From positions 186,001-250,000 of IMG/VR virus record IMGVR_UViG_3300047476_002078: a stretch of 64,000 bases of DNA, one strand, 5' to 3'. The position numbers were made by a program, and so were the translations under genes. The notes beneath the pieces are model-generated. The model was not told the origin of the DNA and did not search any database. It saw only the letters and a list, made by a program, of their open reading frames with translations. Below, in pieces: positions 2,546-63,642 of the stretch (position 1 is the stretch's first letter; every line of letters begins with the position of its first letter).

Positions 2546-3178
2546 TTGATGGGTTCAATATTTGTTCAAGCTATTGATTCTAATGAATTAGAAGCACGAT
2601 TTAGCAATGATGACAGGTTAATGTACTTTGGTCAAAGTAAGTATTCTCTTGATGATGTAAAACCTTACTTGGCAATGCTACCGAAAAAAGAAGCTGATTT
2701 GATTTTGATGTATTACATACTTAAAAAAGATCAAAAAGAGATAGCAAAAATTTTAAATTTATCCCAAGGCGGAGTATCTCACCGAATCGCTCGTGCCCGT
2801 GAAAGACTTAAATTTCTTATTTCTATTCCTAAATTTTCTCGATCTGAACTATTTGAAGACCTAAAAAACATAATTGAAGAAGAAGTTGATTTAATTATCA
2901 TGTGGGAGCTTTATAAAACTACATGTCAAAGCCAAGTTGCGGAAGTTGTCGGAATGACCCAATCAAGAGTCAGACACCGCTTTATGAAGTCTTTAAAGAT
3001 ACTTGAAGATAAATCAGAAACATGTGAAAAATTAAAAATATACTTTGAAGCTTTTCACCAAATATCAAAAAATTTCAATATTCTGCATGAAATTAGTCTT
3101 CCTAAGTGGGCACATAAGAATAAGGACTACAAAGATATTCGTTTGAAGAATGTAAAGAAGGCTAAAAAATCGAAGTAA
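2546..3178 (+). CDS. Protein with two sigma70 region-4-like HTH domains
   Basis: LPKKEADLILMYYILKKDQKEIAKILNLSQGGVSHRIARARERLK is a typical sigma-4 HTH; second copy TCQSQVAEVVGMTQSRVRHRFMKSLKIL. No region 2 seen. Confidence 0.7.
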   Translation: MMGSIFVQAIDSNELEARFSNDDRLMYFGQSKYSLDDVKPYLAMLPKKEADLILMYYILKKDQKEIAKILNLSQGGVSHRIARARERLKFLISIPKFSRSELFEDLKNIIEEEVDLIIMWELYKTTCQSQVAEVVGMTQSRVRHRFMKSLKILEDKSETCEKLKIYFEAFHQISKNFNILHEISLPKWAHKNKDYKDIRLKNVKKAKKSK

Positions 3179-19398: not shown

Positions 19399-19409
19399 TT
19401 TACCGTAAA
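19399..19409. promoter_or_regulatory. Palindrome TTTAC-C-GTAAA; on the minus strand followed after 8 nt by TATAGT (-10-like)
   Basis: Intergenic, upstream of the minus-strand GT/MTase operon; the same palindrome recurs elsewhere in the window. Confidence 0.45.
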
Positions 19410-20233: not shown

Positions 20234-20277
20234 CTATACCGATTCCACTCATAGAGGCAATAGTGGAATCGGTATAG
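20234..20277. promoter_or_regulatory. Perfect 16-12-16 inverted repeat between divergent operons
   Basis: CTATACCGATTCCACT (20234-20249), spacer CATAGAGGCAAT, AGTGGAATCGGTATAG (20262-20277); imperfect extension to CTCA/TGAG. Confidence 0.85.
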
Positions 20278-35622: not shown

Positions 35623-35961
35623 TTAAGCCCCTGTATTTCTGTCTCTAAGATGTTTAATAACTTGAATAAGGTTTCTTTGCAGTTCTTCTTGATTAGTAAA
35701 ACCTCTATTGATTAAAAGATTTTCAATAACTAATATCGAACCTCTGACAATTTCCCATTCTGTTAAATTCATATCTTTCATTTGGTCAAAAAGAACCTTT
35801 TTACGTTCTTCCCCAACAATAACTTTGATAAGCTCTATACGCTCTTTTAATTTAACCATCTGGAGAGTTTGTTCTCCAGATGGTGTAGTTATGGATGAAA
35901 GAGCTTTCAATTGATTTTTATAATCCTCTAGCATCAAAGTTAGTCTGTTTTCATCTAGCAT
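35623..35961 (-). CDS. Hypothetical coiled-coil protein
   Basis: 112-aa ORF coupled to phoH (TAATG overlap). Confidence 0.55.
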   Translation of the reverse strand: MLDENRLTLMLEDYKNQLKALSSITTPSGEQTLQMVKLKERIELIKVIVGEERKKVLFDQMKDMNLTEWEIVRGSILVIENLLINRGFTNQEELQRNLIQVIKHLRDRNTGA

Positions 35962-36836
35962 TACTCTTCCTCAAATATTTTTGTGAACAGTTCTGCTACG
36001 GGACCTCTTTCAACTTTGAGAAGATGTATGTGACCTGTAATTGGAGACTGTTTAAATATTTCACTCTCAATGACTTTCATAATTCCGGGCTTAAACCCCT
36101 TAGTTTTTACATCTACTTGATTATAGTCTCCTGATATGATTAAACGTGACTCTTCACCAATACGTGTTCCAAGAGTCTTTATGATGTGGTCATCTACGTT
36201 TTGAGCTTCATCTAAGTAAACAACAGTGTTTCCAGAAAAACTTACACCTCGCATTAATTCTAAAGGCATAAATTCTATTAACCCTTTCGTTAAAAACATA
36301 TCAAAATAAGATTTACCTTTATCGCCAGCAAGTTTATCAAAAAGGTACTTAAAATTAAGCAGGAAAGGGGCAAATTTCTCATCGCTATCGCCCGGAACAG
36401 TACCGTAATACTTCGACCCTCCGACAATTTCCATCGGTTTACTTATGACAATTTTATCAATTTTCTTTTTTGTTAATGCGTCGCACAAGTAAGAGCCAAT
36501 GAGAAGAGATTTTCCTGTTCCTGCTTTTCCTGTAACTGTTACAACTTTAAGAGATTCGTCTGCCAGTACATTAAATAGCATGATCTGTTCTTTATTTTTT
36601 GGAACAACTCCGAAGAAATCCCAGTTTTGTTTGATCGGAACTATTTTCTTTCCGTCAGTTGATATTTTAGCAAGGGCGGAAGTTTGACCAGCGGATTTTA
36701 AAACTAAAAATTGATTAGGGTATAAATCCGCTTTTAATTTTAACGTAGATAAATCAATAAAACCATTTTCATAAAATTTTTGGATGTCATTAAAATCTTC
36801 AAGAACAGAGACTCCAGTAAACTTATCTTTCATCAA
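35961..36836 (-). CDS. phoH: PhoH-family ATPase
   Basis: GKAGTGKS Walker A, KIVISKP, PG...EKFAPF, IEFMPLELMRGVSF, LDEAQN, LGTRIGE.SR...GD..Q.D. Confidence 0.92.
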   Translation of the reverse strand: MMKDKFTGVSVLEDFNDIQKFYENGFIDLSTLKLKADLYPNQFLVLKSAGQTSALAKISTDGKKIVPIKQNWDFFGVVPKNKEQIMLFNVLADESLKVVTVTGKAGTGKSLLIGSYLCDALTKKKIDKIVISKPMEIVGGSKYYGTVPGDSDEKFAPFLLNFKYLFDKLAGDKGKSYFDMFLTKGLIEFMPLELMRGVSFSGNTVVYLDEAQNVDDHIIKTLGTRIGEESRLIISGDYNQVDVKTKGFKPGIMKVIESEIFKQSPITGHIHLLKVERGPVAELFTKIFEEE

Positions 36837-36893: not shown

Positions 36894-38042
36894 CTAACCT
36901 GTGACGAGTTTCTTAATATCTTTGAGAATGAAATCCTTTGTTTGATTTAAAGATGAATTGTTTACTTGATAAGTTTTTGCTATTTCTTTGTTAGTTTTTC
37001 CGTTCAACATCATTCTAAATAATTTATATGTAACGTCTGACTGAGTATTCAAAAAGTATTTTCCTTCCACCATTTCAAAAAGCTCTGAATGATTTTCTTG
37101 AAAATAAGAAATTATAAACCAAGTTAAATTTTCAATTTGATCGAATACTAAGTGAGATTTAAAATTAGTTTGATAGACGTAAGGTTTCCCTTTTTTATAT
37201 CTCATAACAACTCTGTGTACAAAACCGTTAGATTCTAGCTCTGTAAGTATTTCATCTATCTTTTCAGAAGAATAATCTAAAACAGTTTTACATTCCATTA
37301 GCGTAGGCTGACAGTTTGATATGAAATTAAAAACGTCAGAAGCTTCGTAAGAGAGTTTGCTAAAATCTAAAATTCTTTTTTTAACCCCTGCTACATTTTC
37401 CCACAAGTTATTATTTTCCGAAGTTTCAATCGAACCTTTTTTAAACTTTTCCCAAATATCATACTTAATTTGATCTTTCTTTGGATGATAAGGATTAGAT
37501 TGAAAAGCTACTTTTTTGTCTTCTATAAAATTGCATATTTCTTTTGTACTTCTCGGTGTTTCAAAAAACTCCCATAGAGCACTATATATGGTTCCTTTTT
37601 TATAAGGATTATGAATTTTTAGATTTTTCTTTTTATGCTCTAAATGCTCTTTTATTTTTTCATCTACATCTAAAATTTCTAGTTTGTCTGAAAACGTGAA
37701 ATCAGAGTTGAAGTCTTTAATGTCAAGAATGGTTGTACCACTGTCTTCAAACATAGGAACATCAAGGCTGAGTGCGTGAGTTACCAACTCTTTATCTTCT
37801 TTAACTTTCTTACCTTTTAAGAACTTAAACAAATATGTGTAGAGATAGGTACTAAATTGAGCTTTTGTTGAATCATAAGTTTCAAAAAATTTCTTTTCTA
37901 ACAGATGTGCGTAAACATCGTTTTTAATCTCTGGTAACTCTTCAACTTTTATGTAGTTTTTGAAAGACCTACATAATATTCTTTCCAAGTCTTTATCATA
38001 TTTTTGGACAAATTCATCCAAAGTTTTACAAGGTCGTAGCAT
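36894..38042 (-). CDS. Sigma70-family factor with inserted winged-helix domains
   Basis: Region 2-like FFETYDSTKAQFSTYLY, region 3.2-like LSLDVPMFED, C-terminal HTH GKTNKEIAKTYQV; central insert with TrmB-like LSYEASDVF...LTELESNGFV.R..GKP..Y. Confidence 0.65.
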   Translation of the reverse strand: MLRPCKTLDEFVQKYDKDLERILCRSFKNYIKVEELPEIKNDVYAHLLEKKFFETYDSTKAQFSTYLYTYLFKFLKGKKVKEDKELVTHALSLDVPMFEDSGTTILDIKDFNSDFTFSDKLEILDVDEKIKEHLEHKKKNLKIHNPYKKGTIYSALWEFFETPRSTKEICNFIEDKKVAFQSNPYHPKKDQIKYDIWEKFKKGSIETSENNNLWENVAGVKKRILDFSKLSYEASDVFNFISNCQPTLMECKTVLDYSSEKIDEILTELESNGFVHRVVMRYKKGKPYVYQTNFKSHLVFDQIENLTWFIISYFQENHSELFEMVEGKYFLNTQSDVTYKLFRMMLNGKTNKEIAKTYQVNNSSLNQTKDFILKDIKKLVTG

Positions 38043-38063
38043 CCGTGCCTCCCTAATGTTATT

Positions 38064-40847
38064 TTAAATATTCAAATAATCTGCCAGAGTATCAAACCTG
38101 TTAGCGTCTAAATCATTACCTTGAGCAATGATTTGCTGTTGCATTGTTATTTTGTAAGGGTTCGTTCCTTTACACATTTTTATCAATGCTTCTATTTGGT
38201 ACATTTTTTGTTCTGTGATAAAAGAACTTTTCATTTTGTACTCATAGCTCATCCAAGCTGTAGGCTTTTTTCTTATTTCATTTTGTATTTCTTTTCCTAC
38301 AACTTTTAAAGAATTCAAATTTTTAATATATTCTGATATTCCAACTAAAAAAGCTTTTTCAGGGTCTTTAGTACAATAGTTTTTAAAAGATTCAATGGCA
38401 TTTTTTAAAGAGTTCTCATCAAAATTATCCATCGCTATTATTTCGTGTTCAGGCAATAAATCTACATGTTCTTGAGGAATAGTATGTTGATCTTCTGTCA
38501 ACATTTCTACAGCTTTAGCAGCATTTTCGGAATTTAAAGATTCAACATCAAAAAAGTCATCGTTGATTGTTTCTTCTTTAGGAACACTAAGTTGTTCCAT
38601 TTTTTGTTCTATTTTTTCTGTGACTGGAGTTGGGTCTTCCCCAACAGGTTTTAAAGTTTTTGGGTCTAAAGACATAGCGAGTGCTTTTACTAATCTAAGG
38701 TTATCGTTAAGCTTTTCTAATAAATGAGGATTTTTTTGAAAATATTCATATTCAACGTCCCAATTATCTCCTACTTCGCAATCCATTGAAAGAGGAACCG
38801 CCCATTTTAAAACCCCTTGAAGAATAGTGTCCATGGACATTAAATTCATCAACTCCGGAATATGGACATCCATTTTATCTTCTTTGATCTCAAAAACTAA
38901 TTCATCGTGAACCGTAATGAGCATACGAACTTCATCATTAGACTTTGCTATGTATTCATTTGTGCGAACCATAGCCATTTTCATAATATCTCCACCTGCA
39001 CCTTGAATTGGAGTATTAATCGCTAACCTTTCAGACTCGGCTCTTTCTCTATTTATTTCTGATTTAATCATAGGAAGAGGTCTTCTTCTTCCTAATGGGG
39101 TGGAAGCGTACATGTTTTTATGAGCTTTTTTCTTGGTAGTATCCATCCACCTTTTTAAATCGCCAAGACCGCCAATCATTCGTTGTTGAAACTCTTTTGC
39201 CTCTTCAAAACTAGATTTAATTTTTCTTGAAATAGCAGAAGGACCTCCACCATAAAGGGTTTGGAAGTTAATTGCTTTTGAGGCATCCCGTTGATGCCCA
39301 TCTGGATTTTGAGTCTTAAATACAATTTTTGCTGTTTCTGTGTGAAGGTCGCCTGTGCCTTCTAAGAACTCTTTAATCCATATTTTTTCTTGAGAGACGT
39401 TAGCCGCCACCCTAAGCTCTTGTCCTGAATAGTCAATTGCGGCTAATTTATATCCGGGTCTGGCTCTAATACACGATCTGAGAAAGAAACCTGAGCCTTT
39501 CTTTTTTACTAATTCTAGGATTGGAATCGGATTTCCATTCTTGTCATATTTGTCTTTCTTTTTGAGAGGTTTGGTCAAAGCTTGAATGTTGACCCCGGAG
39601 TAACCTTCGTGAGCCTCTCCACCTTGGGACGCAAATCTGCCTGTTTCCACTCTCCAAGGAACAAACTTAAATTTAACTTCATTAAACTCGTCAGCCCTTG
39701 TTAAAAAATTATCAAGGTATGTGCCAACCGTTTTATTTATATCACGTAAGGTAAGAATTATATCTATCAAAGGGCATGTATCTATAAAAGGTTTTAGAGC
39801 CTCTTCGCCAGTCTCTATCTTCTTTTCACCCTTTTCTATAATGTAATTACCCTTGTCATCTTTAGCATAAATATCAAGATTGAAAGGAGGGCTAGTTAAA
39901 ATTTTTCCTACTTGAGCAGGAGAGGCGAGATTGGCAGAATACCCAAGAATTTTTGCAGCTTCATCTTGCAGTTCTAATTTTAATCCTAATAGGATGGATT
40001 TAAACTCTTTAATTTTTTCAATATCAATTAAGCATTTGTTTCTTTCCATTTGCCTAATAGCAAAAGTACAGCGTCTTTCTAGGTAGTAAATAAAAGCTTG
40101 TTCGTCAGCAACATGTTTTAATTTTTGATATAAATGATAAGTACATATAGCATCGGAAGCGGCGTACACAGTAGTCTTCTCATCATTGATAGGGTCTAAA
40201 GTGTAAAATTTAATATCTTTTTTGGTTTGAAAGATGTCAGTCAATTCCAACATTTTCATACCTAATAAACTTTCAGATAAAGCTTTTAGACCTTTTGATT
40301 TTAAAGAAGAATCCCACAAGTAAGCTAAACAGAAAGTATCATGAAACATTAGCTCTTTTATTTGCAATCTCTTATTGCTATCCACAGGAACCATTTTGTG
40401 TTCCTCTGGCTTTTTTACTTCTGGTATCTGAAAATTATTAGCGTGTAGTATTTCGTGATCGTATAGAGAGTTATGATAAATTGTTACACAACCATCCAGT
40501 ATTTTTTGTATTTCAATTTTAGCTAAGTCGTAATCAATATTAAGTTCAGATAATCTATGAAAAACTCCCTCATCTTCATAACCGTGATTTACTGGAACAT
40601 AATATCCAGTTTCCCCGTCAAAGCATAAAGCGTAGCCTGCGATAAATGTGTTGCATTTACCATTATAAACACGGGAATCAAGACCTGAAGTTTCCAAGTC
40701 AAGAACACACATGCCTGCTTTAATAGCCTTGTCTGCGATCTCTCTAAGTTGATGAATATCTTTTACACATATAAAAGATTTTTCCTTCATCCAAGGAAAT
40801 CTGTCAAAAAGTGAAACGCCTGTAATTTCTTCATCTGATAATAGCAT
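38064..40847 (-). CDS. polA: Family A DNA polymerase (3'-5' exonuclease plus polymerase) with ~230-aa C-terminal extension
   Basis: ExoI DLETSG, ExoII HNSLYD, ExoIII YAASDA; motif A DYSGQELR, motif B R..SKAINF..LYG, motif C TVHDELVF. No 5'-3' exonuclease domain. Confidence 0.95.
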   Translation of the reverse strand: MLLSDEEITGVSLFDRFPWMKEKSFICVKDIHQLREIADKAIKAGMCVLDLETSGLDSRVYNGKCNTFIAGYALCFDGETGYYVPVNHGYEDEGVFHRLSELNIDYDLAKIEIQKILDGCVTIYHNSLYDHEILHANNFQIPEVKKPEEHKMVPVDSNKRLQIKELMFHDTFCLAYLWDSSLKSKGLKALSESLLGMKMLELTDIFQTKKDIKFYTLDPINDEKTTVYAASDAICTYHLYQKLKHVADEQAFIYYLERRCTFAIRQMERNKCLIDIEKIKEFKSILLGLKLELQDEAAKILGYSANLASPAQVGKILTSPPFNLDIYAKDDKGNYIIEKGEKKIETGEEALKPFIDTCPLIDIILTLRDINKTVGTYLDNFLTRADEFNEVKFKFVPWRVETGRFASQGGEAHEGYSGVNIQALTKPLKKKDKYDKNGNPIPILELVKKKGSGFFLRSCIRARPGYKLAAIDYSGQELRVAANVSQEKIWIKEFLEGTGDLHTETAKIVFKTQNPDGHQRDASKAINFQTLYGGGPSAISRKIKSSFEEAKEFQQRMIGGLGDLKRWMDTTKKKAHKNMYASTPLGRRRPLPMIKSEINRERAESERLAINTPIQGAGGDIMKMAMVRTNEYIAKSNDEVRMLITVHDELVFEIKEDKMDVHIPELMNLMSMDTILQGVLKWAVPLSMDCEVGDNWDVEYEYFQKNPHLLEKLNDNLRLVKALAMSLDPKTLKPVGEDPTPVTEKIEQKMEQLSVPKEETINDDFFDVESLNSENAAKAVEMLTEDQHTIPQEHVDLLPEHEIIAMDNFDENSLKNAIESFKNYCTKDPEKAFLVGISEYIKNLNSLKVVGKEIQNEIRKKPTAWMSYEYKMKSSFITEQKMYQIEALIKMCKGTNPYKITMQQQIIAQGNDLDANRFDTLADYLNI

Positions 40848-40863
40848 TTAAAAAGAATATGAA

Positions 40864-40874
40864 ATTACGGTAAA
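40864..40874. promoter_or_regulatory. ATTAC-G-GTAAA palindrome variant upstream of polA
   Basis: Lies in the 39-bp intergenic gap; one mismatch to TTTACSGTAAA. Confidence 0.35.
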
Positions 40875-54352: not shown

Positions 54353-55354
54353 TTAACCTAATCTGAGTAATATTTTTGAAGCTATTTTTTTCTTAGCTAC
54401 TAATATTTCTCTAGCATCTTCAAAAGAAGATAACTCTAGTTTTTTGAAAATCTTTCCTAAATCTTTAACGAAGTATTGAACAAAATCTGAAAACTTTTTA
54501 TCGTCCATATTTAGTTCGTTCATGAATTTCTTTTGATCTGCTTTAACAAACGGGTCGAATCCGTCAGCTATGAGATTTAAAGCCTTTTCATATAAAGGAT
54601 TTAACTTTTTAACTTCTTGATAAAGTTCTTTTTTTATAGCTTTTGCTTCGTTTTTAGTGTGGCTTGATTCATCTTGAAAAAGTTTATCTTCTCTCACTCC
54701 ATCAAATGACTCATCATCTCTTGATATTATCCTTACGGCAGTATTAAGAGCATCTTCTGTTTTGTTAGTTTTTTCTAAAATTTTGATAGCCATATTTTTT
54801 GCAGCCGTGTACCAAAATTTAGTGAAAGAACCTATTGAAGGATTGTAGCTCTTAAATATAGCGTCTCTTATTCTTTTACCTTGCATTACTTTTTCAGGAC
54901 TAATTTTTTTTGTTGGTGTTTTTTCACCGTCATAAAATTTCTTTAAATAAGACAAATCTGGTATGTTGTATTCTTTGGATAGACTAACAATCCAGTCATT
55001 ATCAATTATTTGTTCAAAGCTTAAACCTTTTGATTTAAGGTTTATGACAGCTACAGGAAGCATTTGAAATTTTAAGTATTTGTAATCAAACTTTTTTTCT
55101 TCATCTGTAAGATTTGGGAATATTAAACGATGTACAGCATCTATAGCTATATGTTCATAATAATCTTTAGCTCCTGCATCTTTGGCAGCTTTGAACGCTA
55201 AGTTCATTAAATTTGTATTTTTAGGTAAGTTTATTTCGTGTTCTTTTGCTAACTCAATTAACATATTGTTAAATCTAGTTATTTCTGCGTTTGCAAAAAT
55301 CTTTCGTTTAATTTTTTCAAAAACTGAGTTTGCTATTTTTTTATAATTTATCAT
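54353..55354 (-). CDS. Divergent ECF-like sigma factor candidate
   Basis: FKSYNPSIGSFTKFWYTAAKNMAIKIL resembles region 2.3-2.4; AKD...EHIAIDAV resembles 2.1-2.2; C-terminal LYEKALNL.ADG..QKKFMNELNM resembles a sigma-4 HTH. Confidence 0.5.
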   Translation of the reverse strand: MINYKKIANSVFEKIKRKIFANAEITRFNNMLIELAKEHEINLPKNTNLMNLAFKAAKDAGAKDYYEHIAIDAVHRLIFPNLTDEEKKFDYKYLKFQMLPVAVINLKSKGLSFEQIIDNDWIVSLSKEYNIPDLSYLKKFYDGEKTPTKKISPEKVMQGKRIRDAIFKSYNPSIGSFTKFWYTAAKNMAIKILEKTNKTEDALNTAVRIISRDDESFDGVREDKLFQDESSHTKNEAKAIKKELYQEVKKLNPLYEKALNLIADGFDPFVKADQKKFMNELNMDDKKFSDFVQYFVKDLGKIFKKLELSSFEDAREILVAKKKIASKILLRLG

Positions 55355-58300
55355 AACTTACCTAGAGGTCTTCCTTTAATTTTGAATAAATCAAACGAGT
55401 TATTTGAAGAGAAATCAGAGTTGGTTATTTCAACGCTTGTTTCTGTAGTCATTCTTGTTTCAACTCTTAAAACGTACTCACCTCTTTCAAAATTTCCTGT
55501 AGGGTCTTCTAAAACTTGTTCGAGCATAAACATAACAGTTTGTTTCTTAACAGAGTTAATAGTATCCATACCAACTGAATAGAAATTTGAACCTTTAAAA
55601 GTACCTCGGTTATTGATTACATTATCTTTAGAAATGTAATTTTCTCTGCCTGATACATAAGGTTGTACTCTAGTCGAGGTTTCATCGTTAATACCAGAAA
55701 CAATAGGCACGTCAAAAGAATAGGCTCTGTTTTTGAAGAAATTGATACCTGCCCCGTCACTTAAAGGATAGCTTCCTTTTTGACGTAAAAATTTCATAAT
55801 TCTTTGTTCTTTTTGACCATACCAAATTTCTCCATCTTGAGGAGCCACAACATTTGGATTATCTATTTCAATATATGGAGGAATGATATTAAACCCATAA
55901 ACTTTTTCCGAAGGAGAGTTTACTAAACTAATAAATTTAACTCTAACAACTGTGGTAGATGAAGAATCTCCTCCAGTTCTTGAAGTAAACTCTAATCTAT
56001 TCCAACCTGTTACAAAATTTAAAGCTTCGTAAGAATGGAATGTATCGTCTTCACAAATTAAGTGCATTGAAAAGTTTTCAACTTTAGATTGATCTGGTAT
56101 AAAAACCCAGTAAACTAAACGGCTTCCAGCCACTACATTTCCATCAACATCAATTAGTGCTGACCAGTCATTGTAAAATGTTTCTTTTGAAATCTCTGCA
56201 AGACTTCCGCTTGTTCCTGTTTTGTTAAATCTTAAAGTAGGTCTTAGATACATACTTCTAATATCATCTGTTCTGATTCCAGACGTATCTAAATTATCAG
56301 ATTCCCAGTCATGAAGAACTTCAAAATCATTGCTAGAAAACCCTCCGCTTATTGTGTAGTCAGCGTCAAGACTTATGCCTTTATGATAAGGGTAAATTTC
56401 TGCACCTAAAGGTTCGTTTCCTAAATCAGAATCTTTATCTGAGAAAGCCTTTGGTAATTTTACAGAGATAGGGGAATAAGCATCTGGAACGGTAGAGTTA
56501 AATCCATTTGTTCCAGAAGTGTGAACTAAGAACCCTCTTGCTTGATCTATCAAACGTGTTCTTACGAATGAATTTACTCCATTACCAAATGATTGCTTCG
56601 CAGTAACTCCTTGGTATGGCGTAAACATATAAAAAATTTGTAATTGCTGATTTGAATCTAAAGCTTTTGATCTATTTACTGTGATAGAAATTGTGTTGTT
56701 TTGACTTACTCCTATAGGAGAATCAAGTTGAACAGTAATAAAATTTCCATCAATAGTGGTAGTACATGGAGTTGCAAGACCATCAATGTAACAAATGTCT
56801 TGGTAGGTGCTTAAAGATAACTTTTCAGATTGAGCAGAATAGATAATTCCTGTAGAAGCAATCGTTATTTGAGTTAAATTTTGCCCGTTAAGAACAGTCT
56901 TACTTAAAATTTCAATTTGAGAAAGATTTGTAATAGATTTGGTTTTTTCTTGAATAAGAGCAGCATTATTAGCAAGACCTACTGCAAAAACCATAGGAGT
57001 ATTTACAGGTACAGCGTTATTAAAAATAACTGTAATCGTATTATCAAAATTTTGATTTATCTGTTGTATGCTCAATGGAGAAGTTGATCTGGAAATTAAA
57101 GTTCCACTGACTGTAATATAATGAACATGAGTAATAGGGATAGTGCCGTAATTGGCAGGTAGTGTATAACTTTGAGTACCGTCTCCAAATACTTGTAAAA
57201 ATCCTAAAGTAGTGAATCCTTCTTTTTCATTCTTCCCGATTCTGTAGTCTTGTGCTGTTAAATTTGAAACTAAAGAACCTGATCTGATTCCATCAAGATC
57301 ATTTTCGGATACAAAGCTAAAATTAACATTGTCACGTACTTCAAAAATTCTTTTTATTTCAGTTGGAACGAATGTTAATCCGTTTCCATTAGGATAAGCA
57401 ATTTCATACTCAACATAAAGCTGTTGATTAGAAACACCTGTAGGAACTTCTCCTAGTGTTATGATTAAAGCTGTATCCCCAACAGGTTCAATTACACTTG
57501 GAATTTCAACTTTTGATTCAGAAGCTCCTGATTTTACAACTGCGAAAACCTTTAAAGGGTTTCTTCCAAATGTCGTTCCTACTGGGTTTGAACCAAGCAA
57601 GTTTAGATTGAATTGATCTCCTAGAGTCCAGTTGATACCTTTAACTTCTGTTCTATCAGTAAGAGAGAATCTTTGAATTGTTTTTTGAATTGTGTCAGCA
57701 TCACTGAATACACGTCTTTGACCATTTGGGGCAGCTATGTCTAATGCTCCAGTCTGGTCAACTGTGGAAATACCATCTACATGAAGACCTGTAGCATTAA
57801 ATGATAAATCTGCTCCTAGAACAGATTCAGTTAAAACAGTATTTAGGTTTCCTTCGAGTAGGCTTTTAAAAGCAAAATCAAGTTGATGTGTATTTACACT
57901 AATAACGCAAGTATGTCTTAAATCTTCAATATCCCCGATTTCTATTTTATCGTTAAAATATCCGTCTGGTCTGTCTGAATTTCCTTGAGCAATTGTTTTT
58001 CCTGCTCCGTTAAGATTCAGTAAACTAAAAGGGGAAGCGTTTCTTCTGTGTATTCTAAAAAGAGGTATAGCGTATGAATAACCATCAACTGTACCTAAAT
58101 CTGAAATAGAAGAAGAGTCTCCATTACCTGCTCTGTATAGTCCGGAATCATCTAATGCTTTTTCAAAAGAATAAGCTAAACTCGTATTCCCTCTTCCTGC
58201 TTGAGCTTTGACGTTGTTAGTGTCAAGAATACCTTCAGGAAAACCTGCAAAATTAACTCCAGTGACTACACGGATACGATACTGCATTTGAACACGTTGC

Positions 58301-58857
58301 GTAGTATCTGTTCCGATAGGGCTGTAATAAATGTCATCATCAAGATGTTCCATTCCGCTTTGGACGTTACCAAATTTATAAATTTTTCCACTTTCAGGAC
58401 GGTTTGCTAAAGAGTTTGGAAATAATTCTTGATACCACACTTCAAGAAAAACTAAATCTTGTCTTGAACCTGAAGATGGAGCGGGAGGCAAAGTAATTGC
58501 TAGTTTTGATTGATCGCTTGTATTAGTTCCGCCAACATCAAGAACTTCACCTAAAACATTAACCTTAAATGGTAGTCCAAGAAAATTTCTTACTATAAAT
58601 TGATTGGGAGTTTCAGTTAAGTTTACTCCGTAGGCGTTACCATTATTATCATATCCAATTTCAAAAGCGTTTACATCCATAGGATAGAAACCGCTCGTCA
58701 TTAGCTCACGAACTTGCATTTTATTTAAGTCGTGTGCTAAATCTCCAACGAAGTTAAGTTCTGAATCCAGAGGCGGTTTACTTGGTTTGAAAATTACACT
58801 TCTGTAGCTTGTGTTGTTTGATTCAAGAGTTCTAGTTGTTCCAGTATAACTTTTCAT
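55351..58857 (-). CDS. Large virion structural protein (baseplate/fibre-associated), paralogue 1
   Basis: N-terminal F.P.KPPLDSELN reminiscent of DUF6519-type proteins; D.VFLEVW, R.Q.QYRIRV, LGTVDGY.YA.P; beta-rich body. Confidence 0.65.
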   Translation of the reverse strand: MKSYTGTTRTLESNNTSYRSVIFKPSKPPLDSELNFVGDLAHDLNKMQVRELMTSGFYPMDVNAFEIGYDNNGNAYGVNLTETPNQFIVRNFLGLPFKVNVLGEVLDVGGTNTSDQSKLAITLPPAPSSGSRQDLVFLEVWYQELFPNSLANRPESGKIYKFGNVQSGMEHLDDDIYYSPIGTDTTQRVQMQYRIRVVTGVNFAGFPEGILDTNNVKAQAGRGNTSLAYSFEKALDDSGLYRAGNGDSSSISDLGTVDGYSYAIPLFRIHRRNASPFSLLNLNGAGKTIAQGNSDRPDGYFNDKIEIGDIEDLRHTCVISVNTHQLDFAFKSLLEGNLNTVLTESVLGADLSFNATGLHVDGISTVDQTGALDIAAPNGQRRVFSDADTIQKTIQRFSLTDRTEVKGINWTLGDQFNLNLLGSNPVGTTFGRNPLKVFAVVKSGASESKVEIPSVIEPVGDTALIITLGEVPTGVSNQQLYVEYEIAYPNGNGLTFVPTEIKRIFEVRDNVNFSFVSENDLDGIRSGSLVSNLTAQDYRIGKNEKEGFTTLGFLQVFGDGTQSYTLPANYGTIPITHVHYITVSGTLISRSTSPLSIQQINQNFDNTITVIFNNAVPVNTPMVFAVGLANNAALIQEKTKSITNLSQIEILSKTVLNGQNLTQITIASTGIIYSAQSEKLSLSTYQDICYIDGLATPCTTTIDGNFITVQLDSPIGVSQNNTISITVNRSKALDSNQQLQIFYMFTPYQGVTAKQSFGNGVNSFVRTRLIDQARGFLVHTSGTNGFNSTVPDAYSPISVKLPKAFSDKDSDLGNEPLGAEIYPYHKGISLDADYTISGGFSSNDFEVLHDWESDNLDTSGIRTDDIRSMYLRPTLRFNKTGTSGSLAEISKETFYNDWSALIDVDGNVVAGSRLVYWVFIPDQSKVENFSMHLICEDDTFHSYEALNFVTGWNRLEFTSRTGGDSSSTTVVRVKFISLVNSPSEKVYGFNIIPPYIEIDNPNVVAPQDGEIWYGQKEQRIMKFLRQKGSYPLSDGAGINFFKNRAYSFDVPIVSGINDETSTRVQPYVSGRENYISKDNVINNRGTFKGSNFYSVGMDTINSVKKQTVMFMLEQVLEDPTGNFERGEYVLRVETRMTTETSVEITNSDFSSNNSFDLFKIKGRPLGKL

Positions 58858-58861
58858 TATT

Positions 58862-61800
58862 TTAAACCTTCTGATTTATACTCAGTCTTCTGTTTTTAGT
58901 GTAAAAGAAATCCGCAGCTATTACGACACGGTTAGCTTCATTCAAGGTTCCCTCTAAGCTAGTAACCTCTAAATTATTGTTAAAAATTAAATGATTAGCT
59001 GAACCGACTTTTAGTAAGTTAAATTCAGGTCTATTCACACTCTCGATATTTGATGTGGTGGTTATGACAAAAGACAAAAGCTCTCCTTCTAAAACGCCTT
59101 TTCCTATAGCTAAACCGTGAATAATATTTAAAGTATTGCTTCCAGTTCTATATTTTATAACCACTTTATCAGTCAGAGCAGGAGCTTCCCTTAAAACAAT
59201 CATTCCTTCATTTCCAAAAACTTCCAGAATATCTTCTGGTTCTAGTTCTACACCATTTTTCACTACAACTAAATCAGGTGCATATATTTCCCAATCTGCC
59301 GTTGTTGAAGATTCTGAAAAAGGAGTTTTAATTACTAAGGTCGCATCATCGGTAATTTTTGAAACTTCATACCAAGTAGTAGAACCCATAGGTCTGATTA
59401 AATAGCCCGGTCTTAAAGAGCGTGTGAAAAAAGCGTTTAATCCGCTTACTGTAGTTGAGGCATTGTTGAAAACAGCTAATCCTACCATTTTCCAAGTACG
59501 ACTTAAACATACGGTATTATAAATAGCCATTATTTTTCTTGAAACTTTAAATATTCTGTTTCCACCATTTACTTGTAAAGTTACGTTCTCTTCTAACCTT
59601 TCAACAAGGTCGTCAACTCTGTACGAAATTTTTGGAGAATTTAAAGAACATCCTCTTTGTACGGCGTATGGAGAAGCATCACTTTCTTTTTTAAGAACTA
59701 AAGTGTCTCCAATTTTAAGAGATTTTGTTTCAGGATAACCGTCATATCTATAAGTTAATTCTTTGATACTTCCAATAGCTTTGCTGTTAGGAATCAAAAG
59801 ATTTGAATTATCTAGCTGGTAGTCATAATCCGTTGAGTTTAACGGAAGCCTTGTGGAAATTCCGTAGATACCTTCACTGATCTGTGATGGAATTTGTGGA
59901 GCACCTTCATAATTTTTAGGATTGCTACTGCCTGTACCATTAGTTGTTATTTTTGCATTGTCGCACAAATAAACAACTTCAGCTTCTAATGTTTCACCTG
60001 TTGAAATTAAGCTACTAAGACCTTGATAAGGAACATAATCGTAGGTGATTGTGTATTGGTCTGTAGCTAAAGGGGCAAAGCTACCTATCATAGGAATGTA
60101 GATAATTTTTCCTGCTTCAGGAGCTAATGGAAAGTTAATCGTAATTCGTGATGAATTTAAGCCTATAACAGAGCTTATTTCAACCCACTTACCATCGCTT
60201 GTTTGAGTGTCTGCTACGTAAGCGTGAGCCTTATAAGAACTACCGTCGTAAAGCCCTGCCACTCCATAAACAAATTCCATTTTGTTTAAAACTTGAGTGA
60301 CTGGTGAAATGTTATATTGATTTGCCCCTGTTGAGGTCAGTTGATACATCAAGGTCTGAGAAAAATTTTCTAAACCTTTGTTCTTTCTATTTATCTCACA
60401 AGCATATCCACTCATTAAGACAGTTACTTTTATAATGTCATTTAAAGTCGGGAAATAAGATTGAAAATTTATTTCAAAAGACCCGTCAGCACGTCTTAAA
60501 ACTTTAGGATTGTTGGAAAATCCTAATGGTATGTCTTGCCCACCTGAAAACTGCACTCTTCCAATTGTGAGAACAGTTCTTCCATCAATAGTAGAAGGTA
60601 TAGTTACTTTGCCTGAACCGTTTCCAGTAATGTGGTAAACTCTCTCAATGACACCGCCTCTAAAATTTTCTTGTTGAGAGGTAGGGTTTATAAATCGGCT
60701 TACTGGAAAAATTGTTTGAGAGTCTCTCCAAGTGCCTTGAACTACTCTATTTAATTCTTGTGATATTACTTTTTCATCTTCAGTGAAAACTACATCCGTA
60801 GCTTTCATATCATCTCTTATATTATAAACATTTCTAGGTATTTGAAAAAGTCCGGAACCCGAAGGAATCACTAAATCATATTCTATGATGATAGGTTTTC
60901 CTGCTAAGTCTCCAGCGGCGGATGGTCTGAAAGTGACTTTATCTTTATTTGTTCTGTCTCCGAGATTAGACCAACCATTAATTCCCACATTGGCAGGGAT
61001 TATTTCTAGCCCTGTCTGAGCGTTATATATCTTTGGAACATTTTCTGCTCCTATAAATGGATTGTAACTTCTATACTGTTCAGAATCAGTTACCGTGTAA
61101 AATTGCGGAGGAAATATTTCTAATTGGTTTACCGAATTTAAAGTAGCGGCAGCTAAATAAATTACAGTTCTTTGAGTTTTTTCAGAGTCAGTAAAATTTC
61201 TTTTTACGTTGTTAGGTCTGCGTAAAAAACTCTCATTGATATTTGGTCGATCTGTTGCTGAAATACCGTCAATTTGGATATTAACTGAAGAAAAAATATC
61301 AGGTCGATCTCCTAATATTAATCTGTCAGGGATACCTCTAATAAGATTATCGAAAGATTCCTCACAAATAGCTTTTAAATCTTCTTCTATGGCTACAGTG
61401 TGTCTTAAATCTTCTATGTCAAAACGATATATTTCATCTCCGAAAATACCGTCAGGTCGATCTGAATTTCCTTGTGATAAAAGCTTGGAAGCTCCATTTG
61501 GATTTGAATTTGAATAGATTGTTTTATTTTTTCTGTGAAGGCTACATAAAGGCAATGCGTACACATATCCATCTACAGTTCCAAGATCATTTGCAGACTG
61601 TTCTGTTCCATTCCCTGCTACATAATGACCCATCTCTGTTTTTTGGAAAACATAGTTAGGATTTGAGACAGGTAAACTTTTAGCACCTTGCCCAAAAATA
61701 GACGGATGCCCTAATCCTTCTCGATAAGATACTAAATCTACCCCTTCTGAGACTCTAATTCGGTACTTAGTTTGTACTCGAACGGAGGTTTCTCTATTTA

Positions 61801-62323
61801 CGGAAGGGTCAATCAAATCATTCGTAAAAGGAGATAAAGCGGTTTGAGCATTTCCAAATTTGTTGATAGCACTTGAAGGGTTTACTAACTCGTCCCACAC
61901 TTCTAAGAAAACGACATCATCTCTGGAACCTGATTCAGGTCCATCTCCAACAAGAAAAACTAATTCATCTTCTTGGTTTGATAAAATCTTCCAGATGTTA
62001 TCAGAAGCTCCAATTTGGAATTGGTTTGTACCTGCTCCCAAGAACAATATTTTTCCATTGATTAAAACTAAAGGGTTTTTAATCTTGATGGCATTTTTCC
62101 AAAAACTACTTCCGTTTTCAGGTCGAGTAGTGATCTCACCACGAGTAATGAAACCAGATTTGTGAAAAGACCGTAAAATATCACTAATAATAGTATTTTG
62201 AATATTTTGAAGTAAATTGAACTCAGAGTCCAAAGGCGGTCTAAGTGGTTGAAAAACAACTGAATTAAAAGATTTATCTTTTGCTTCAAGAACTCTTGAG
62301 ACTTTGTTTCCTAATTTCTGCAT
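58862..62323 (-). CDS. Large virion structural protein (baseplate/fibre-associated), paralogue 2
   Basis: Shares PPLDSE.N, DDVVFLEVW, LGTVDGYVYA.P and QGNSDRPDG...DIEDLRH blocks with the adjacent gene. Confidence 0.65.
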   Translation of the reverse strand: MQKLGNKVSRVLEAKDKSFNSVVFQPLRPPLDSEFNLLQNIQNTIISDILRSFHKSGFITRGEITTRPENGSSFWKNAIKIKNPLVLINGKILFLGAGTNQFQIGASDNIWKILSNQEDELVFLVGDGPESGSRDDVVFLEVWDELVNPSSAINKFGNAQTALSPFTNDLIDPSVNRETSVRVQTKYRIRVSEGVDLVSYREGLGHPSIFGQGAKSLPVSNPNYVFQKTEMGHYVAGNGTEQSANDLGTVDGYVYALPLCSLHRKNKTIYSNSNPNGASKLLSQGNSDRPDGIFGDEIYRFDIEDLRHTVAIEEDLKAICEESFDNLIRGIPDRLILGDRPDIFSSVNIQIDGISATDRPNINESFLRRPNNVKRNFTDSEKTQRTVIYLAAATLNSVNQLEIFPPQFYTVTDSEQYRSYNPFIGAENVPKIYNAQTGLEIIPANVGINGWSNLGDRTNKDKVTFRPSAAGDLAGKPIIIEYDLVIPSGSGLFQIPRNVYNIRDDMKATDVVFTEDEKVISQELNRVVQGTWRDSQTIFPVSRFINPTSQQENFRGGVIERVYHITGNGSGKVTIPSTIDGRTVLTIGRVQFSGGQDIPLGFSNNPKVLRRADGSFEINFQSYFPTLNDIIKVTVLMSGYACEINRKNKGLENFSQTLMYQLTSTGANQYNISPVTQVLNKMEFVYGVAGLYDGSSYKAHAYVADTQTSDGKWVEISSVIGLNSSRITINFPLAPEAGKIIYIPMIGSFAPLATDQYTITYDYVPYQGLSSLISTGETLEAEVVYLCDNAKITTNGTGSSNPKNYEGAPQIPSQISEGIYGISTRLPLNSTDYDYQLDNSNLLIPNSKAIGSIKELTYRYDGYPETKSLKIGDTLVLKKESDASPYAVQRGCSLNSPKISYRVDDLVERLEENVTLQVNGGNRIFKVSRKIMAIYNTVCLSRTWKMVGLAVFNNASTTVSGLNAFFTRSLRPGYLIRPMGSTTWYEVSKITDDATLVIKTPFSESSTTADWEIYAPDLVVVKNGVELEPEDILEVFGNEGMIVLREAPALTDKVVIKYRTGSNTLNIIHGLAIGKGVLEGELLSFVITTTSNIESVNRPEFNLLKVGSANHLIFNNNLEVTSLEGTLNEANRVVIAADFFYTKNRRLSINQKV

Positions 62324-63530: not shown

Positions 63531-63642
63531 TTAATGCTTAAAAAAGAAAGAGAGAGATAATATATAATATAATATAGTAAAACATATATTGTTCTAATTT
63601 GACTTATTTTGTCAGGATAATAAATAAAGATTTTACGGTAAA
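63363..63642. promoter_or_regulatory. Cluster of TTTAC-G-GTAAA palindrome copies
   Basis: TTTACGGTAtt 63363-63373, TTTACGGTAAt 63384-63394 (21 bp apart), perfect TTTACGGTAAA 63632-63642. Confidence 0.55.

What the first reader, a model, noticed from the sequence alone, without database searches (positions are those of the whole stretch)
36894..38042. Sigma factor with two winged-helix domains inserted between regions 3.2 and 4
Residues ~10-110 look like sigma regions 2-3.2 and ~335-380 like region 4. Between them, ~148-216 (GTIYSALWEFFETPRSTKEICNFI) resembles a HARE-HTH/wHTH and ~228-293 (LSYEASDVF...SSEKIDEILTELESNGFVHR...GKPYVY) closely resembles a TrmB/MarR-type wHTH. A sigma factor with built-in sequence-specific DNA-binding domains would fuse sigma and activator. 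I do not recognise this architecture. It is a natural candidate reader of the TTTAC-S-GTAAA palindromes.
Basis: partly seen in the sequence, partly recalled or inferred. Interest (0 to 1): 0.7.

Follow-up and report, generated by a model that had tools for sequence, protein, structure and literature searches.

The report
Phage sigma factor with winged-helix insert
A giant freshwater phage encodes an RNA-polymerase sigma factor that carries an extra ~195-residue module with a tandem pair of winged-helix-type domains between its two standard domains, a layout not found in the papers and structure libraries searched, whose role (DNA reading or partner docking) is still open.

Summary
The ORF at 36894..38042 (minus strand, 382 aa) is real and conserved: 21 full-length homolog clusters, several on contigs of 120-480 kb. 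The N-terminus (residues 1-90) is a sigma-70 region-2 domain. It is significantly similar to ~200-aa phage proteins that pass Pfam's Sigma70_r2 threshold, and its model superposes on ECF sigma-2 domains. The C-terminus (335-382) is a sigma-4/LuxR-type HTH. Those short relatives run sigma-2, linker, one helix, sigma-4, so residues ~140-334 are an insertion. Within it, WH2 (224-297) is a clear winged helix (Z ~10 to MecI/MexR). WH1 (146-223) is only a probable one, and 298-334 is a small extra module. A controlled complex prediction places region 2.2 on the beta-prime clamp helices (0.72 versus 0.00 in controls). The complete 356-kb phage shows no RNA polymerase of its own. Its functional reading does not follow. 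The WH2 'recognition' helix is acidic and unconserved. The TTTAC-S-GTAAA palindrome is real (22 copies) but behaves like an operator for a dimer, precedes the sigma gene's own operon, and is absent from a related phage that keeps the protein. Verdict: a new architectural variant of a phage sigma factor; the insert's function is unknown.

The parts
36894..38042 (-). Whole gene, 382 aa plus stop codon: sigma factor with winged-helix insert
   Evidence: ORF list; 21 homolog clusters; AF2 model mean pLDDT 81.9
38048..38053 (-). Shine-Dalgarno GGGAGG, 5 nt upstream of the ATG. The gap to the polA stop is only 21 nt, so co-transcription with polA is likely
   Evidence: Sequence read; no terminator-like site on the minus strand in the operon
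37794..38042 (-). Residues 1-83: sigma region 2 (2.1-2.4), including the invariant FSTYLY.YL motif. This is the most conserved part (mean top-residue frequency 0.86)
   Evidence: predicted contact of residues 37-49 with beta-prime 263-287
37695..37793 (-). Residues 84-116: acidic linker (SLD.P..D...TL.D), equivalent to region 3.2 / the ECF linker. Low pLDDT in the free full-length model
   Evidence: predicted contacts with beta-prime 240-253 and 307-314
37638..37694 (-). Residues 117-135: helix shared with the short relatives. It is the last element before the insert
   Evidence: Alignment; predicted contacts with beta-prime 31-36 and 367-387
37374..37607 (-). Residues 146-223: WH1, a probable winged-helix-like domain with the near-invariant motif NPYH.KKD.[IV]K[HY]..W..F
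   Evidence: Model secondary structure; tandem-WH alignments; conservation; no sequence match to solved structures
37152..37373 (-). Residues 224-297: WH2, a MarR/MecI/TrmB-like winged helix with an acidic, variable helix 3 and a basic wing
   Evidence: VIA-align Z 10.6-9.0; TrmB E 0.011, Lrs14 E 0.0022; charge and conservation
37041..37151 (-). Residues 298-334: small strand-helix-hairpin module before sigma-4 (invariant F300, N305, W308, E320, Y329). Also present in the 319-aa relative P0027
36897..37040 (-). Residues 335-382: sigma region 4 / LuxR-type HTH (invariant M..NGK..K.I..T)
40864..40874 (-). One-mismatch copy of the palindrome (TTTACCGTAAT), 16 nt upstream of the polA ATG, i.e. in front of the polA-sigma-PhoH operon
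38064..40847 (-). Family A DNA polymerase, the upstream gene of the operon. The polA then sigma order is conserved in relatives
35961..36836 (-). PhoH-like ATPase, the downstream gene of the operon. Conserved after the sigma gene in the P0016 loci

Best explanation
This is a phage-encoded sigma-70-family factor, descended from an ECF-sized (about 200 aa) phage sigma lineage, that redirects the host's core RNA polymerase to phage promoters. Region 2 binds the beta-prime clamp helices and reads and melts a -10-like element. The acidic linker follows the usual path past the lid and rudder. The helix at 117-135 emerges near the beta-prime dock, and the C-terminal HTH acts as region 4. A ~195-residue module (WH1, WH2 and a small strand-helix-hairpin unit) is inserted between that helix and region 4, so in a holoenzyme it should sit outside the RNA-exit channel next to sigma-4, the beta flap and upstream promoter DNA. 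My best guess is that it is an accessory module. The strongly conserved WH1 (Lys-rich NPYH.KKD.VK motif) would provide a fixed contact with RNAP or with the DNA backbone near or upstream of -35. The fast-evolving WH2 would act as an adaptor or a non-specific, wing-mediated DNA contact. The gene is co-transcribed with replication genes, so its most likely targets are genes expressed after replication starts. Shown here: domain identities, insert boundaries, conservation pattern, synteny, no detectable phage RNAP, and a sigma-like predicted interface. Inferred: actual core binding, promoter class, and what the insert does.
For: Sigma-2: transitive homology to proteins passing the Pfam threshold; fold matches to sigmaE region 2 (4lup, rmsd 2.2 A over 79 columns), Mtb ECF sigmas, SigK, SigH, SigW, T4 gp55; 8 of 10 Atlas rows are sigma clusters. 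Sigma-4. Insert defined against the short relatives. WH2 fold. Complex prediction with B. subtilis beta-prime 1-400 and beta 760-930: score 0.72, best of 3 controls 0.00. That mark was reached by 58 of 80 solved complexes and 2 of 110 mismatched pairs. Runs agree in at least 76% of contacts and partner pLDDT is at least 77. The contacts are the canonical ones: residues 37-49 on beta-prime 263-287. The complete 355,874-bp genome has no RNAP beta hit and no DFDGD-type motif. The polA, sigma, PhoH order is conserved at 42% identity, and P0027 also follows polA. WH1 is conserved while WH2 is variable.
Against: The query itself does not reach any curated sigma threshold. The complex score may reflect memory of solved sigma-core complexes, and it used a surrogate host (the real host is unknown). 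It gave no confident contacts for sigma-4, WH1, WH2 or the beta flap. No cognate promoter was identified: the two strong upstream motifs both precede early or DNA-metabolism genes, and no late motif was found. There is no expression data. The WH1 fold was not verified independently.
Confidence: 0.6

Rival explanations
1. One reading: a sigma-activator fusion in which WH1 and/or WH2 bind DNA sequence-specifically, with the TTTAC-S-GTAAA palindromes as the target.
For: The palindrome is real: 22 copies against about 0.5 expected from composition, 13 of them intergenic, mostly 16-90 bp upstream of start codons. WH2 has a DNA-binding-type fold and a basic wing. The insert should lie near upstream promoter DNA.
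Against: A perfect dyad implies a symmetric dimer. Its placement relative to CTATAAT boxes varies: at the -35 position, further upstream, or downstream. A copy precedes the sigma gene's own operon. There are zero copies in 155 kb of a related phage whose ortholog keeps sigma-2 and the WH1 motif (about 10 expected), and none in the relatives' loci. WH2 helix 3 is acidic and unconserved, and the wing is missing in P0020.
Confidence: 0.1
2. The WH pair reads a different, fixed-geometry promoter element and takes over the job of sigma region 3 (extended -10 or spacer). One candidate is the 16-nt motif (A/G)GTGGAATCGGTATAGC, found about 34 times and ending mostly 17-30 nt before start codons.
For: The motif is strand-matched, rigid in position and about 9-fold enriched upstream of genes. 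It has no separate -35 box, so extra contacts next to the -10 region would be needed. The protein lacks a region 3.
Against: The motif precedes early-type small genes plus a helicase, a ligase and an ATPase, while the sigma gene sits in a replication operon behind a palindrome copy. The motif is absent from the related record G001, though that is a 35%-complete fragment. The insert lies after the linker, not at the usual region-3 position. The phage has at least one other sigma-related protein.
Confidence: 0.12
3. The WH tandem is a protein-docking module, like the WH domains of RPA32C, ScpB or ESCRT-II. It would tether the holoenzyme to another phage or host factor (for example a replisome component, coupling late transcription to replication as T4 does through gp33 and gp45) or to an anti-sigma-like regulator.
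For: The best structural neighbours include protein-binding WH domains (RPA32C Z 10.0, ScpB 9.3, ESCRT-II 8.9). Helix 3 of WH2 is acidic. The gene is embedded in the replication module.
Against: No partner was identified. DNA-binding MarR/MecI/ArsR repressors score equally well. The basic wing is conserved in most members.
Confidence: 0.15
4. It is not an initiation factor at all. It could be a sigma mimic that occupies the clamp helices to shut off host transcription, or a PhyR-like regulator that uses a sigma-like domain only for protein-protein contacts.
For: The sigma-like fold also matched the PhyR sigma-like domain (3t0y, Z 5.1). No promoter has been assigned.
Against: The most conserved residues are those of regions 2.1-2.4, including the aromatic FSTYLY.YL stretch typical of DNA-melting region 2.3. 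The C-terminal HTH is conserved across the long and short forms. The phage has no RNAP of its own and needs a way to retarget host RNAP.
Confidence: 0.05

Closest known systems
ECF (group 4) sigma factors, e.g. E. coli sigmaE, M. tuberculosis SigH/SigK, B. subtilis SigW
   Same: A sigma-2 domain, a short acidic linker and a sigma-4 HTH, with no region 3. These are the best fold matches for residues 1-90. The ~200-aa relatives of this protein have exactly this size and order.
   Different: About 250 residues separate sigma-2 from sigma-4 here. The ECF classification pipeline allows at most 50 (PMC7826278). The query does not reach the Pfam or NCBIfam cut-offs. The extra domains described in that paper are N- or C-terminal fusions, not internal.
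ECF sigmas with fused regulatory domains (ECF41/ECF42-type C-terminal extensions)
   Same: A minimal sigma core enlarged by an extra folded domain within the same polypeptide.
   Different: Those extensions are terminal and act as built-in regulators (PMC3426412 title and abstract). Here the addition is internal, lies between the linker helix and sigma-4, and is made of winged-helix-type domains.
Phage T4 late and middle transcription factors: gp55/gp33/gp45, and MotA/AsiA sigma appropriation
   Same: Phage proteins that retarget host RNAP. gp55 is a sigma-2-like protein (7d7d_F matched at Z 4.8). From established knowledge: gp33 and MotA/AsiA supply, as separate proteins, extra contacts at the beta flap and at about -30, which is where this insert is expected to sit.
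   Different: In T4 those functions are separate polypeptides and gp55 has no region 4. Here sigma-2, a WH pair and sigma-4 are one chain. No sequence relationship to gp33, MotA or AsiA was seen.
MarR / MecI-BlaI / ArsR / TrmB winged-helix repressors
   Same: WH2 superposes on their wHTH core at Z 9-10.6 and rmsd 1.5-3 A. There are weak TrmB and Lrs14 profile hits.
   Different: Only the ~66-residue core matches. The flanking parts of those 120-146-residue repressors are unmatched, helix 3 is acidic and variable, and the Pfam scores are below threshold.
Tandem winged-helix modules (ScpB; Pol III RPC82/RPC34; TFIIE/TFE; ESCRT-II)
   Same: Foldseek aligns residues ~95-293 (WH1 plus WH2) onto both WH domains of ScpB, and onto RPC3 and ESCRT-II, at probability 0.9-0.98. 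From established knowledge, several of these are initiation-factor modules that sit on an RNA polymerase.
   Different: TM-scores are low (at most 0.37), the domain orientation differs, and there is no sequence similarity. The resemblance is at fold level only.

Membership tests
Sigma-70 family | Region 2 domain recognised by the curated model (Pfam PF04542 or TIGR02937) above its cut-off | tested here: not met
   Query: TIGR02937 17.3 bits against a 42.9 cut-off. Sigma70_r2 is seen in 4 of 21 family members, best E 0.0049. The PF04542 scan of the whole genome found nothing.
Sigma-70 family | Homology of the N-terminal domain to proteins that do pass the curated region-2 model | tested here: met
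   phmmer E 1e-19 to 8e-4 against 1.84 billion proteins. P0025, P0026, P0033, P0038, P0041 and P0042 score 24.1-26.4 bits against a cut-off of 24.
Sigma-70 family | Sigma-2 fold | tested here: met
   Fragment model pLDDT 85. 4lup (sigmaE region 2) rmsd 2.2 A over 79 columns, TM 0.63 by target. The top five VIA rows are sigma chains (four annotated ECF or RpoE), Z 6.2-7.5. 8 of 10 Atlas rows are sigma clusters. Individual scores are modest; the specificity of the list carries the weight.
Sigma-70 family | Region 4 HTH at the C-terminus | tested here: inconclusive
   GerE (same HTH type) in 18 of 21 members, best E 4.6e-5. Profile hits to NarL, GerE and EvgA. hhalign E 5.7e-5 but probability only 66% to a bona fide Sigma70_r4_2 domain. 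Short relatives show sub-threshold Sigma70_r4/r4_2 hits in the same columns. Sequence alone cannot separate sigma-4 from a LuxR-type HTH.
Sigma-70 family | Binds core RNAP through region 2.2 and the beta-prime clamp helices | tested here: inconclusive
   In silico only: score 0.72 against best control 0.00, with contacts 37-49 to beta-prime 263-287. A surrogate host was used and the result may come from memory of solved complexes. Real binding is not testable with these tools.
Sigma-70 family | Confers promoter-specific initiation | not testable with these tools
   No cognate promoter identified.
ECF (group 4) sigma factors, operational definition of ECF classification 2.0 | [quoted passage not shown] | tested here: met
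   No Sigma70_r3 hit in the query at E up to 10, and it is not among the 25 families that most of the 21 members match.
ECF (group 4) sigma factors, operational definition of ECF classification 2.0 | [quoted passage not shown] | tested here: not met
   About 250 residues (84-334) lie between them. The criterion is quoted from PMC7826278.
MarR/TrmB-type wHTH transcription regulators | wHTH core fold | tested here: met
   WH2, residues 224-297: Z 10.6-9.0.
MarR/TrmB-type wHTH transcription regulators | Curated family model above its cut-off, and flanking helices that form the MarR-type dimer | tested here: not met
   TrmB 15.9 bits against 25.6; MarR-type models appear in only 1-2 members. The structural alignments cover only ~66 of the 120-146 residues of the repressors.
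HARE-HTH | Match of WH1 to the HARE-HTH model or fold | tested here: not met
   HARE-HTH is not among the 25 most frequently matched of the 36 Pfam families found across the 21 members. The WH1 profile has no significant match to solved structures. The Atlas rows for 140-226 are weak and list other HTH families.

The most novel reading that the evidence does not exclude
A bacterial-type sigma factor has acquired an internal tandem winged-helix module that works on the polymerase surface the way the tandem-WH initiation factors of archaea and eukaryotes do (TFE/TFIIE, Pol III RPC82/34). It would grip upstream or spacer DNA or the clamp/flap to stabilise the open complex, making promoter recognition independent of a normal -35 contact. 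That would be a single-chain sigma plus co-activator, evolved in a clade of freshwater jumbo phages.
Probability: 0.25. Interest if true: 0.8.

Novelty: new variant of a known kind. Interest (0 to 1): 0.6.

Why it matters
The sigma modifications I could find described are N-terminal additions, the non-conserved region of primary sigmas (from established knowledge), or terminal extensions of ECF sigmas. [quoted passage not shown] A sigma with a folded WH pair next to region 4 would show how a minimal sigma can take on functions that other phages supply as separate proteins (T4 gp33, MotA/AsiA). It would also be a compact tool for orthogonal transcription, and it marks an uncultivated clade of 300-480-kb freshwater phages that appear to rely on host RNAP. 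The family offers natural deletion variants (~200-aa, 245-aa, 319-aa and 382-aa forms) for dissecting what the insert does.

Tried and rejected
(1) Direct family and structure-sequence searches of the query gave only sub-threshold hits, and the Skp1 hits in PDB sequences are spurious. (2) A tblastn search against 50,697 phage genomes found no match, and the DNA polymerase is at most 29% identical to any listed phage, so there is no named relative. (3) Whole-model Foldseek and VIA searches are swamped by WH2. (4) The Atlas look-up of residues 140-226 gave scores of 0.70 or less, which are leads only. (5) The test for motif co-variation across relatives failed. Only one related viral record was retrievable (G001, 155 kb, 35% complete). 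It lacks both motifs, and its apparent upstream 'motif' was an artefact of a collagen-like coding repeat. (6) A late-promoter search upstream of the large-gene regions found only sigma-70-like CTATAAT words and nothing phage-specific. (7) The 333-aa ORF at 54353..55354 was rejected as a sigma-2 paralog (hhalign probability 9%). (8) A phage RNAP was rejected; the neighbouring 1153-aa ORF resembles DUF4815 phage proteins at lead level only. (9) An internal WH1/WH2 duplication was rejected because there is no profile similarity. (10) Rfam found nothing in the window. The consensus promoter and terminator scan of the operon was no better than shuffles.

Full report
OBSERVATION. The window is part (186001-250000) of a complete, terminally repeated 355,874-bp phage genome with 34% G+C. 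ORF 36894..38042 on the minus strand encodes 382 aa, starting at an ATG preceded by GGGAGG. It lies 21 nt downstream of a family A DNA polymerase gene and 57 nt upstream of a PhoH-like gene. No terminator-like site was found on that strand, so the three genes probably form one operon inside a replication module that also holds helicases and a DnaB-like helicase. Near-identical DNA (share of sampled words 0.67-1.00) is held in four independent freshwater or lake samples. The 5.8-billion-protein collection holds 21 full-length homolog clusters (371-394 aa, 88-42% identity), several on contigs of 120-480 kb. All are unnamed or 'hypothetical', apart from one automatic 'Lrp family' label. The gene order polA, this gene, PhoH recurs at 42% identity.

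DOMAINS: SIGMA-2. The decisive evidence is indirect. An exhaustive phmmer search of 1.84 billion representatives finds 24 more distant relatives, one of them a 94-aa fragment and the rest 182-319 aa, that match residues 1-140 at E 1e-19 to 8e-4. Six of them pass Pfam's own gathering score for Sigma70_r2, and several show Sigma70_r4, r4_2 or GerE at their C-termini.

DOMAINS: THE INSERT. In a joint alignment these short proteins run region 2, an acidic linker (SLD.P..D...TL.D), one helix, and then the C-terminal HTH, which aligns with residues 335-382 of the query. Residues ~140-334 are therefore an insertion relative to an ECF-sized phage sigma lineage. The 319-aa P0027, also encoded right after polA, has WH1 and the pre-sigma-4 module but little of WH2.

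DOMAINS: EVOLUTION OF THE INSERT. On a tree of the shared N-terminal region the long forms are compatible with one origin, with moderate support (69/79). The 202-228-aa proteins are the nearest outgroups, and P0022 and P0027 are not firmly placed.

STRUCTURE. The full-length AF2 model is confident (mean pLDDT 81.9) except for residues 84-114. A fragment model of residues 1-225 (pLDDT 85) matches almost only sigma-2 domains. These include E. coli sigmaE region 2 on -10 DNA (rmsd 2.2 A over 79 columns), mycobacterial ECF sigmas, SigK, SigH, SigW, AlgU, SigI6, sigma-28 and T4 gp55, and 8 of 10 ESM-Atlas rows are sigma clusters. The scores are modest (Z at most 7.5), so the argument rests on the specificity of the list together with the sequence link.

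STRUCTURE: WH2 AND WH1. WH2 (224-297) superposes on MecI, MexR, MepR, RPA32C and ScpB at Z 10.6-9.0. WH1 (146-223) is modelled as three helices plus a hairpin with a long H2-H3 loop. Foldseek aligns residues ~95-293 onto both WH domains of ScpB and onto RPC3 and ESCRT-II. However, its own profile matches no solved structure, and it shows no similarity to WH2. I therefore call WH1 a probable WH-like domain, and I found no support for the HARE-HTH label.

STRUCTURE: C-TERMINUS. The C-terminal profile hits LuxR/GerE-type HTH domains (NarL 1.9e-4, GerE 4e-4). It aligns onto the Sigma70_r4_2 domain of this phage's second sigma-related protein (E 5.7e-5, probability 66%).

CORE BINDING (IN SILICO). 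I used B. subtilis beta-prime 1-400 and beta 760-930 as surrogates, because the host is unknown. The phage has low G+C, frequent GGAGG sites and CTATAAT boxes. The controlled prediction scored 0.72 against 0.00 for the best of three controls. That mark was reached by 58 of 80 solved complexes and 2 of 110 mismatched pairs. Runs agree in at least 76% of contacts, and partner pLDDT is at least 77. Residues 37-49 (region 2.1/2.2) lie on beta-prime 263-287 (the clamp helices), linker residues 84-95 on beta-prime 240-253 and 307-314, and helix 117-129 on beta-prime 31-36 and 367-387. This is the canonical sigma path. Because such complexes have been solved, it shows likeness rather than proven binding. 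No confident contact was reported for sigma-4, WH1, WH2 or the flap fragment. The phage has no detectable multisubunit RNAP, so a factor that retargets host RNAP fits.

DOES THE INSERT READ DNA? Conservation is uneven. Mean top-residue frequency is 0.86 for sigma-2, 0.57 for WH1 (with the near-invariant NPYH.KKD.[IV]K[HY]..W..F), 0.41 for WH2, 0.65 for the pre-sigma-4 module and 0.62 for sigma-4. Helix 3 of WH2, the usual recognition helix, carries net charge -4 in the query and is the least conserved stretch (0.31). It is 4 residues shorter in one subclade, and P0020 lacks the wing. The wing is otherwise basic. That profile fits an adaptor or backbone contact better than a sequence-specific reader.

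THE PALINDROME. TTTAC[CG]GTAAA occurs twice in the window and 22 times in the genome, against about 0.5 expected from composition. 13 copies are intergenic, mostly 16-90 bp upstream of start codons, and some are tandem. Its position relative to CTATAAT boxes varies. It precedes genes for a DNA-binding protein, a DksA-like protein, ribonucleotide reductase and an ExoV/Dda-like helicase. A one-mismatch copy lies 16 nt upstream of the polA-sigma-PhoH operon. It is absent from the 155-kb related record G001 and from the relatives' loci. It looks like the operator of a dimeric regulator, and the sigma gene appears to be among its targets rather than encoding its reader.

OTHER UPSTREAM MOTIFS. A second, stronger element, (A/G)GTGGAATCGGTATAGC, has about 34 strand-matched copies ending mostly 17-30 nt before the ATG. 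It is concentrated at 120-160 kb, with a divergent pair in the window at 20234..20277. It precedes small genes of unknown function plus a helicase, a ligase, an AAA+ ATPase and an amidoligase. Either motif could in principle be read by a phage sigma, but nothing ties either one to this protein. No late-gene motif was found.

COMPARISON AND NOVELTY. The protein works like, and descends from, ECF-type sigma factors. [quoted passage not shown] A comparative survey of jumbo phages describes only 'minimal' and RpoD-like phage sigmas, with separate wHTH transcription factors (PMC7824862). The viral structure library contains nothing with this overall layout. I rate it a new architectural variant of a known kind. 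Its sigma identity is well supported, and the function of the insert is open.

Noticed in passing
window 20234..20246 (-) and 20265..20277 (+); genome-wide about 34 copies, mostly at genome 120-160 kb: A 16-nt strand-specific motif, (A/G)GTGGAATCGGTATAGC, ends mostly 17-30 nt upstream of start codons and is followed by GA(A/G)A...GGAGG...ATG. It precedes many small genes plus a helicase, a ligase, an AAA+ ATPase and an amidoligase. It is a candidate phage-specific promoter with no visible -35 box; an RNA-level element is also possible. Its reader is unknown.
   Followed up: partly
window 19399..19409, 63632..63642 and the variant at 40864..40874; 22 exact copies in the genome: The palindrome TTTAC[CG]GTAAA is strongly over-represented and mostly intergenic, sometimes in tandem. 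Its position relative to CTATAAT boxes varies, which is operator-like. It precedes DNA-metabolism genes and the polA-sigma-PhoH operon. It is absent from the related record G001.
   Followed up: partly
window 2546..3178 (+): A second sigma-related protein (210 aa) with a bona fide Sigma70_r4_2 domain at residues 42-88 (E 4.5e-14; PHROG sigma factor) and no detectable region 2. It could be a 'minimal sigma' or a gp33-like flap binder.
   Followed up: partly
window 54353..55354 (-), next to 55351..58857 and 58862..62323 (-): A 333-aa ORF contains a local string (F.SYNPS.GSFTKFWYTAAKN) reminiscent of sigma regions 2.2-2.4, but it is not statistically supported (hhalign probability 9%). The two adjacent ~1150-aa ORFs have no Pfam or PHROG hits. 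The 1153-aa one resembles DUF4815 phage proteins at lead level only.
   Followed up: partly
L001/L002 2208..5954 (relatives' polA): The orthologous DNA polymerase in the P0016 phage is 1248 aa (927 aa here) and carries Hom_end/LAGLIDADG domains between two DNA_pol_A segments, so it holds an intein or homing-endonuclease insertion.
   Followed up: no
G001 (L007) 1-19 kb: Very long 9-nt-periodic coding repeats of collagen-like Gly-X-Y type. They produced a false 'upstream motif' in my k-mer screen. Upstream strings near genome 347-352 kb of this phage look similar but were not examined further.
   Followed up: no
genome 250240..250665 (just outside the window's right edge): A DksA-like zinc-finger protein is encoded directly behind a palindrome copy. 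It is another phage protein that may act on host RNAP.
   Followed up: no
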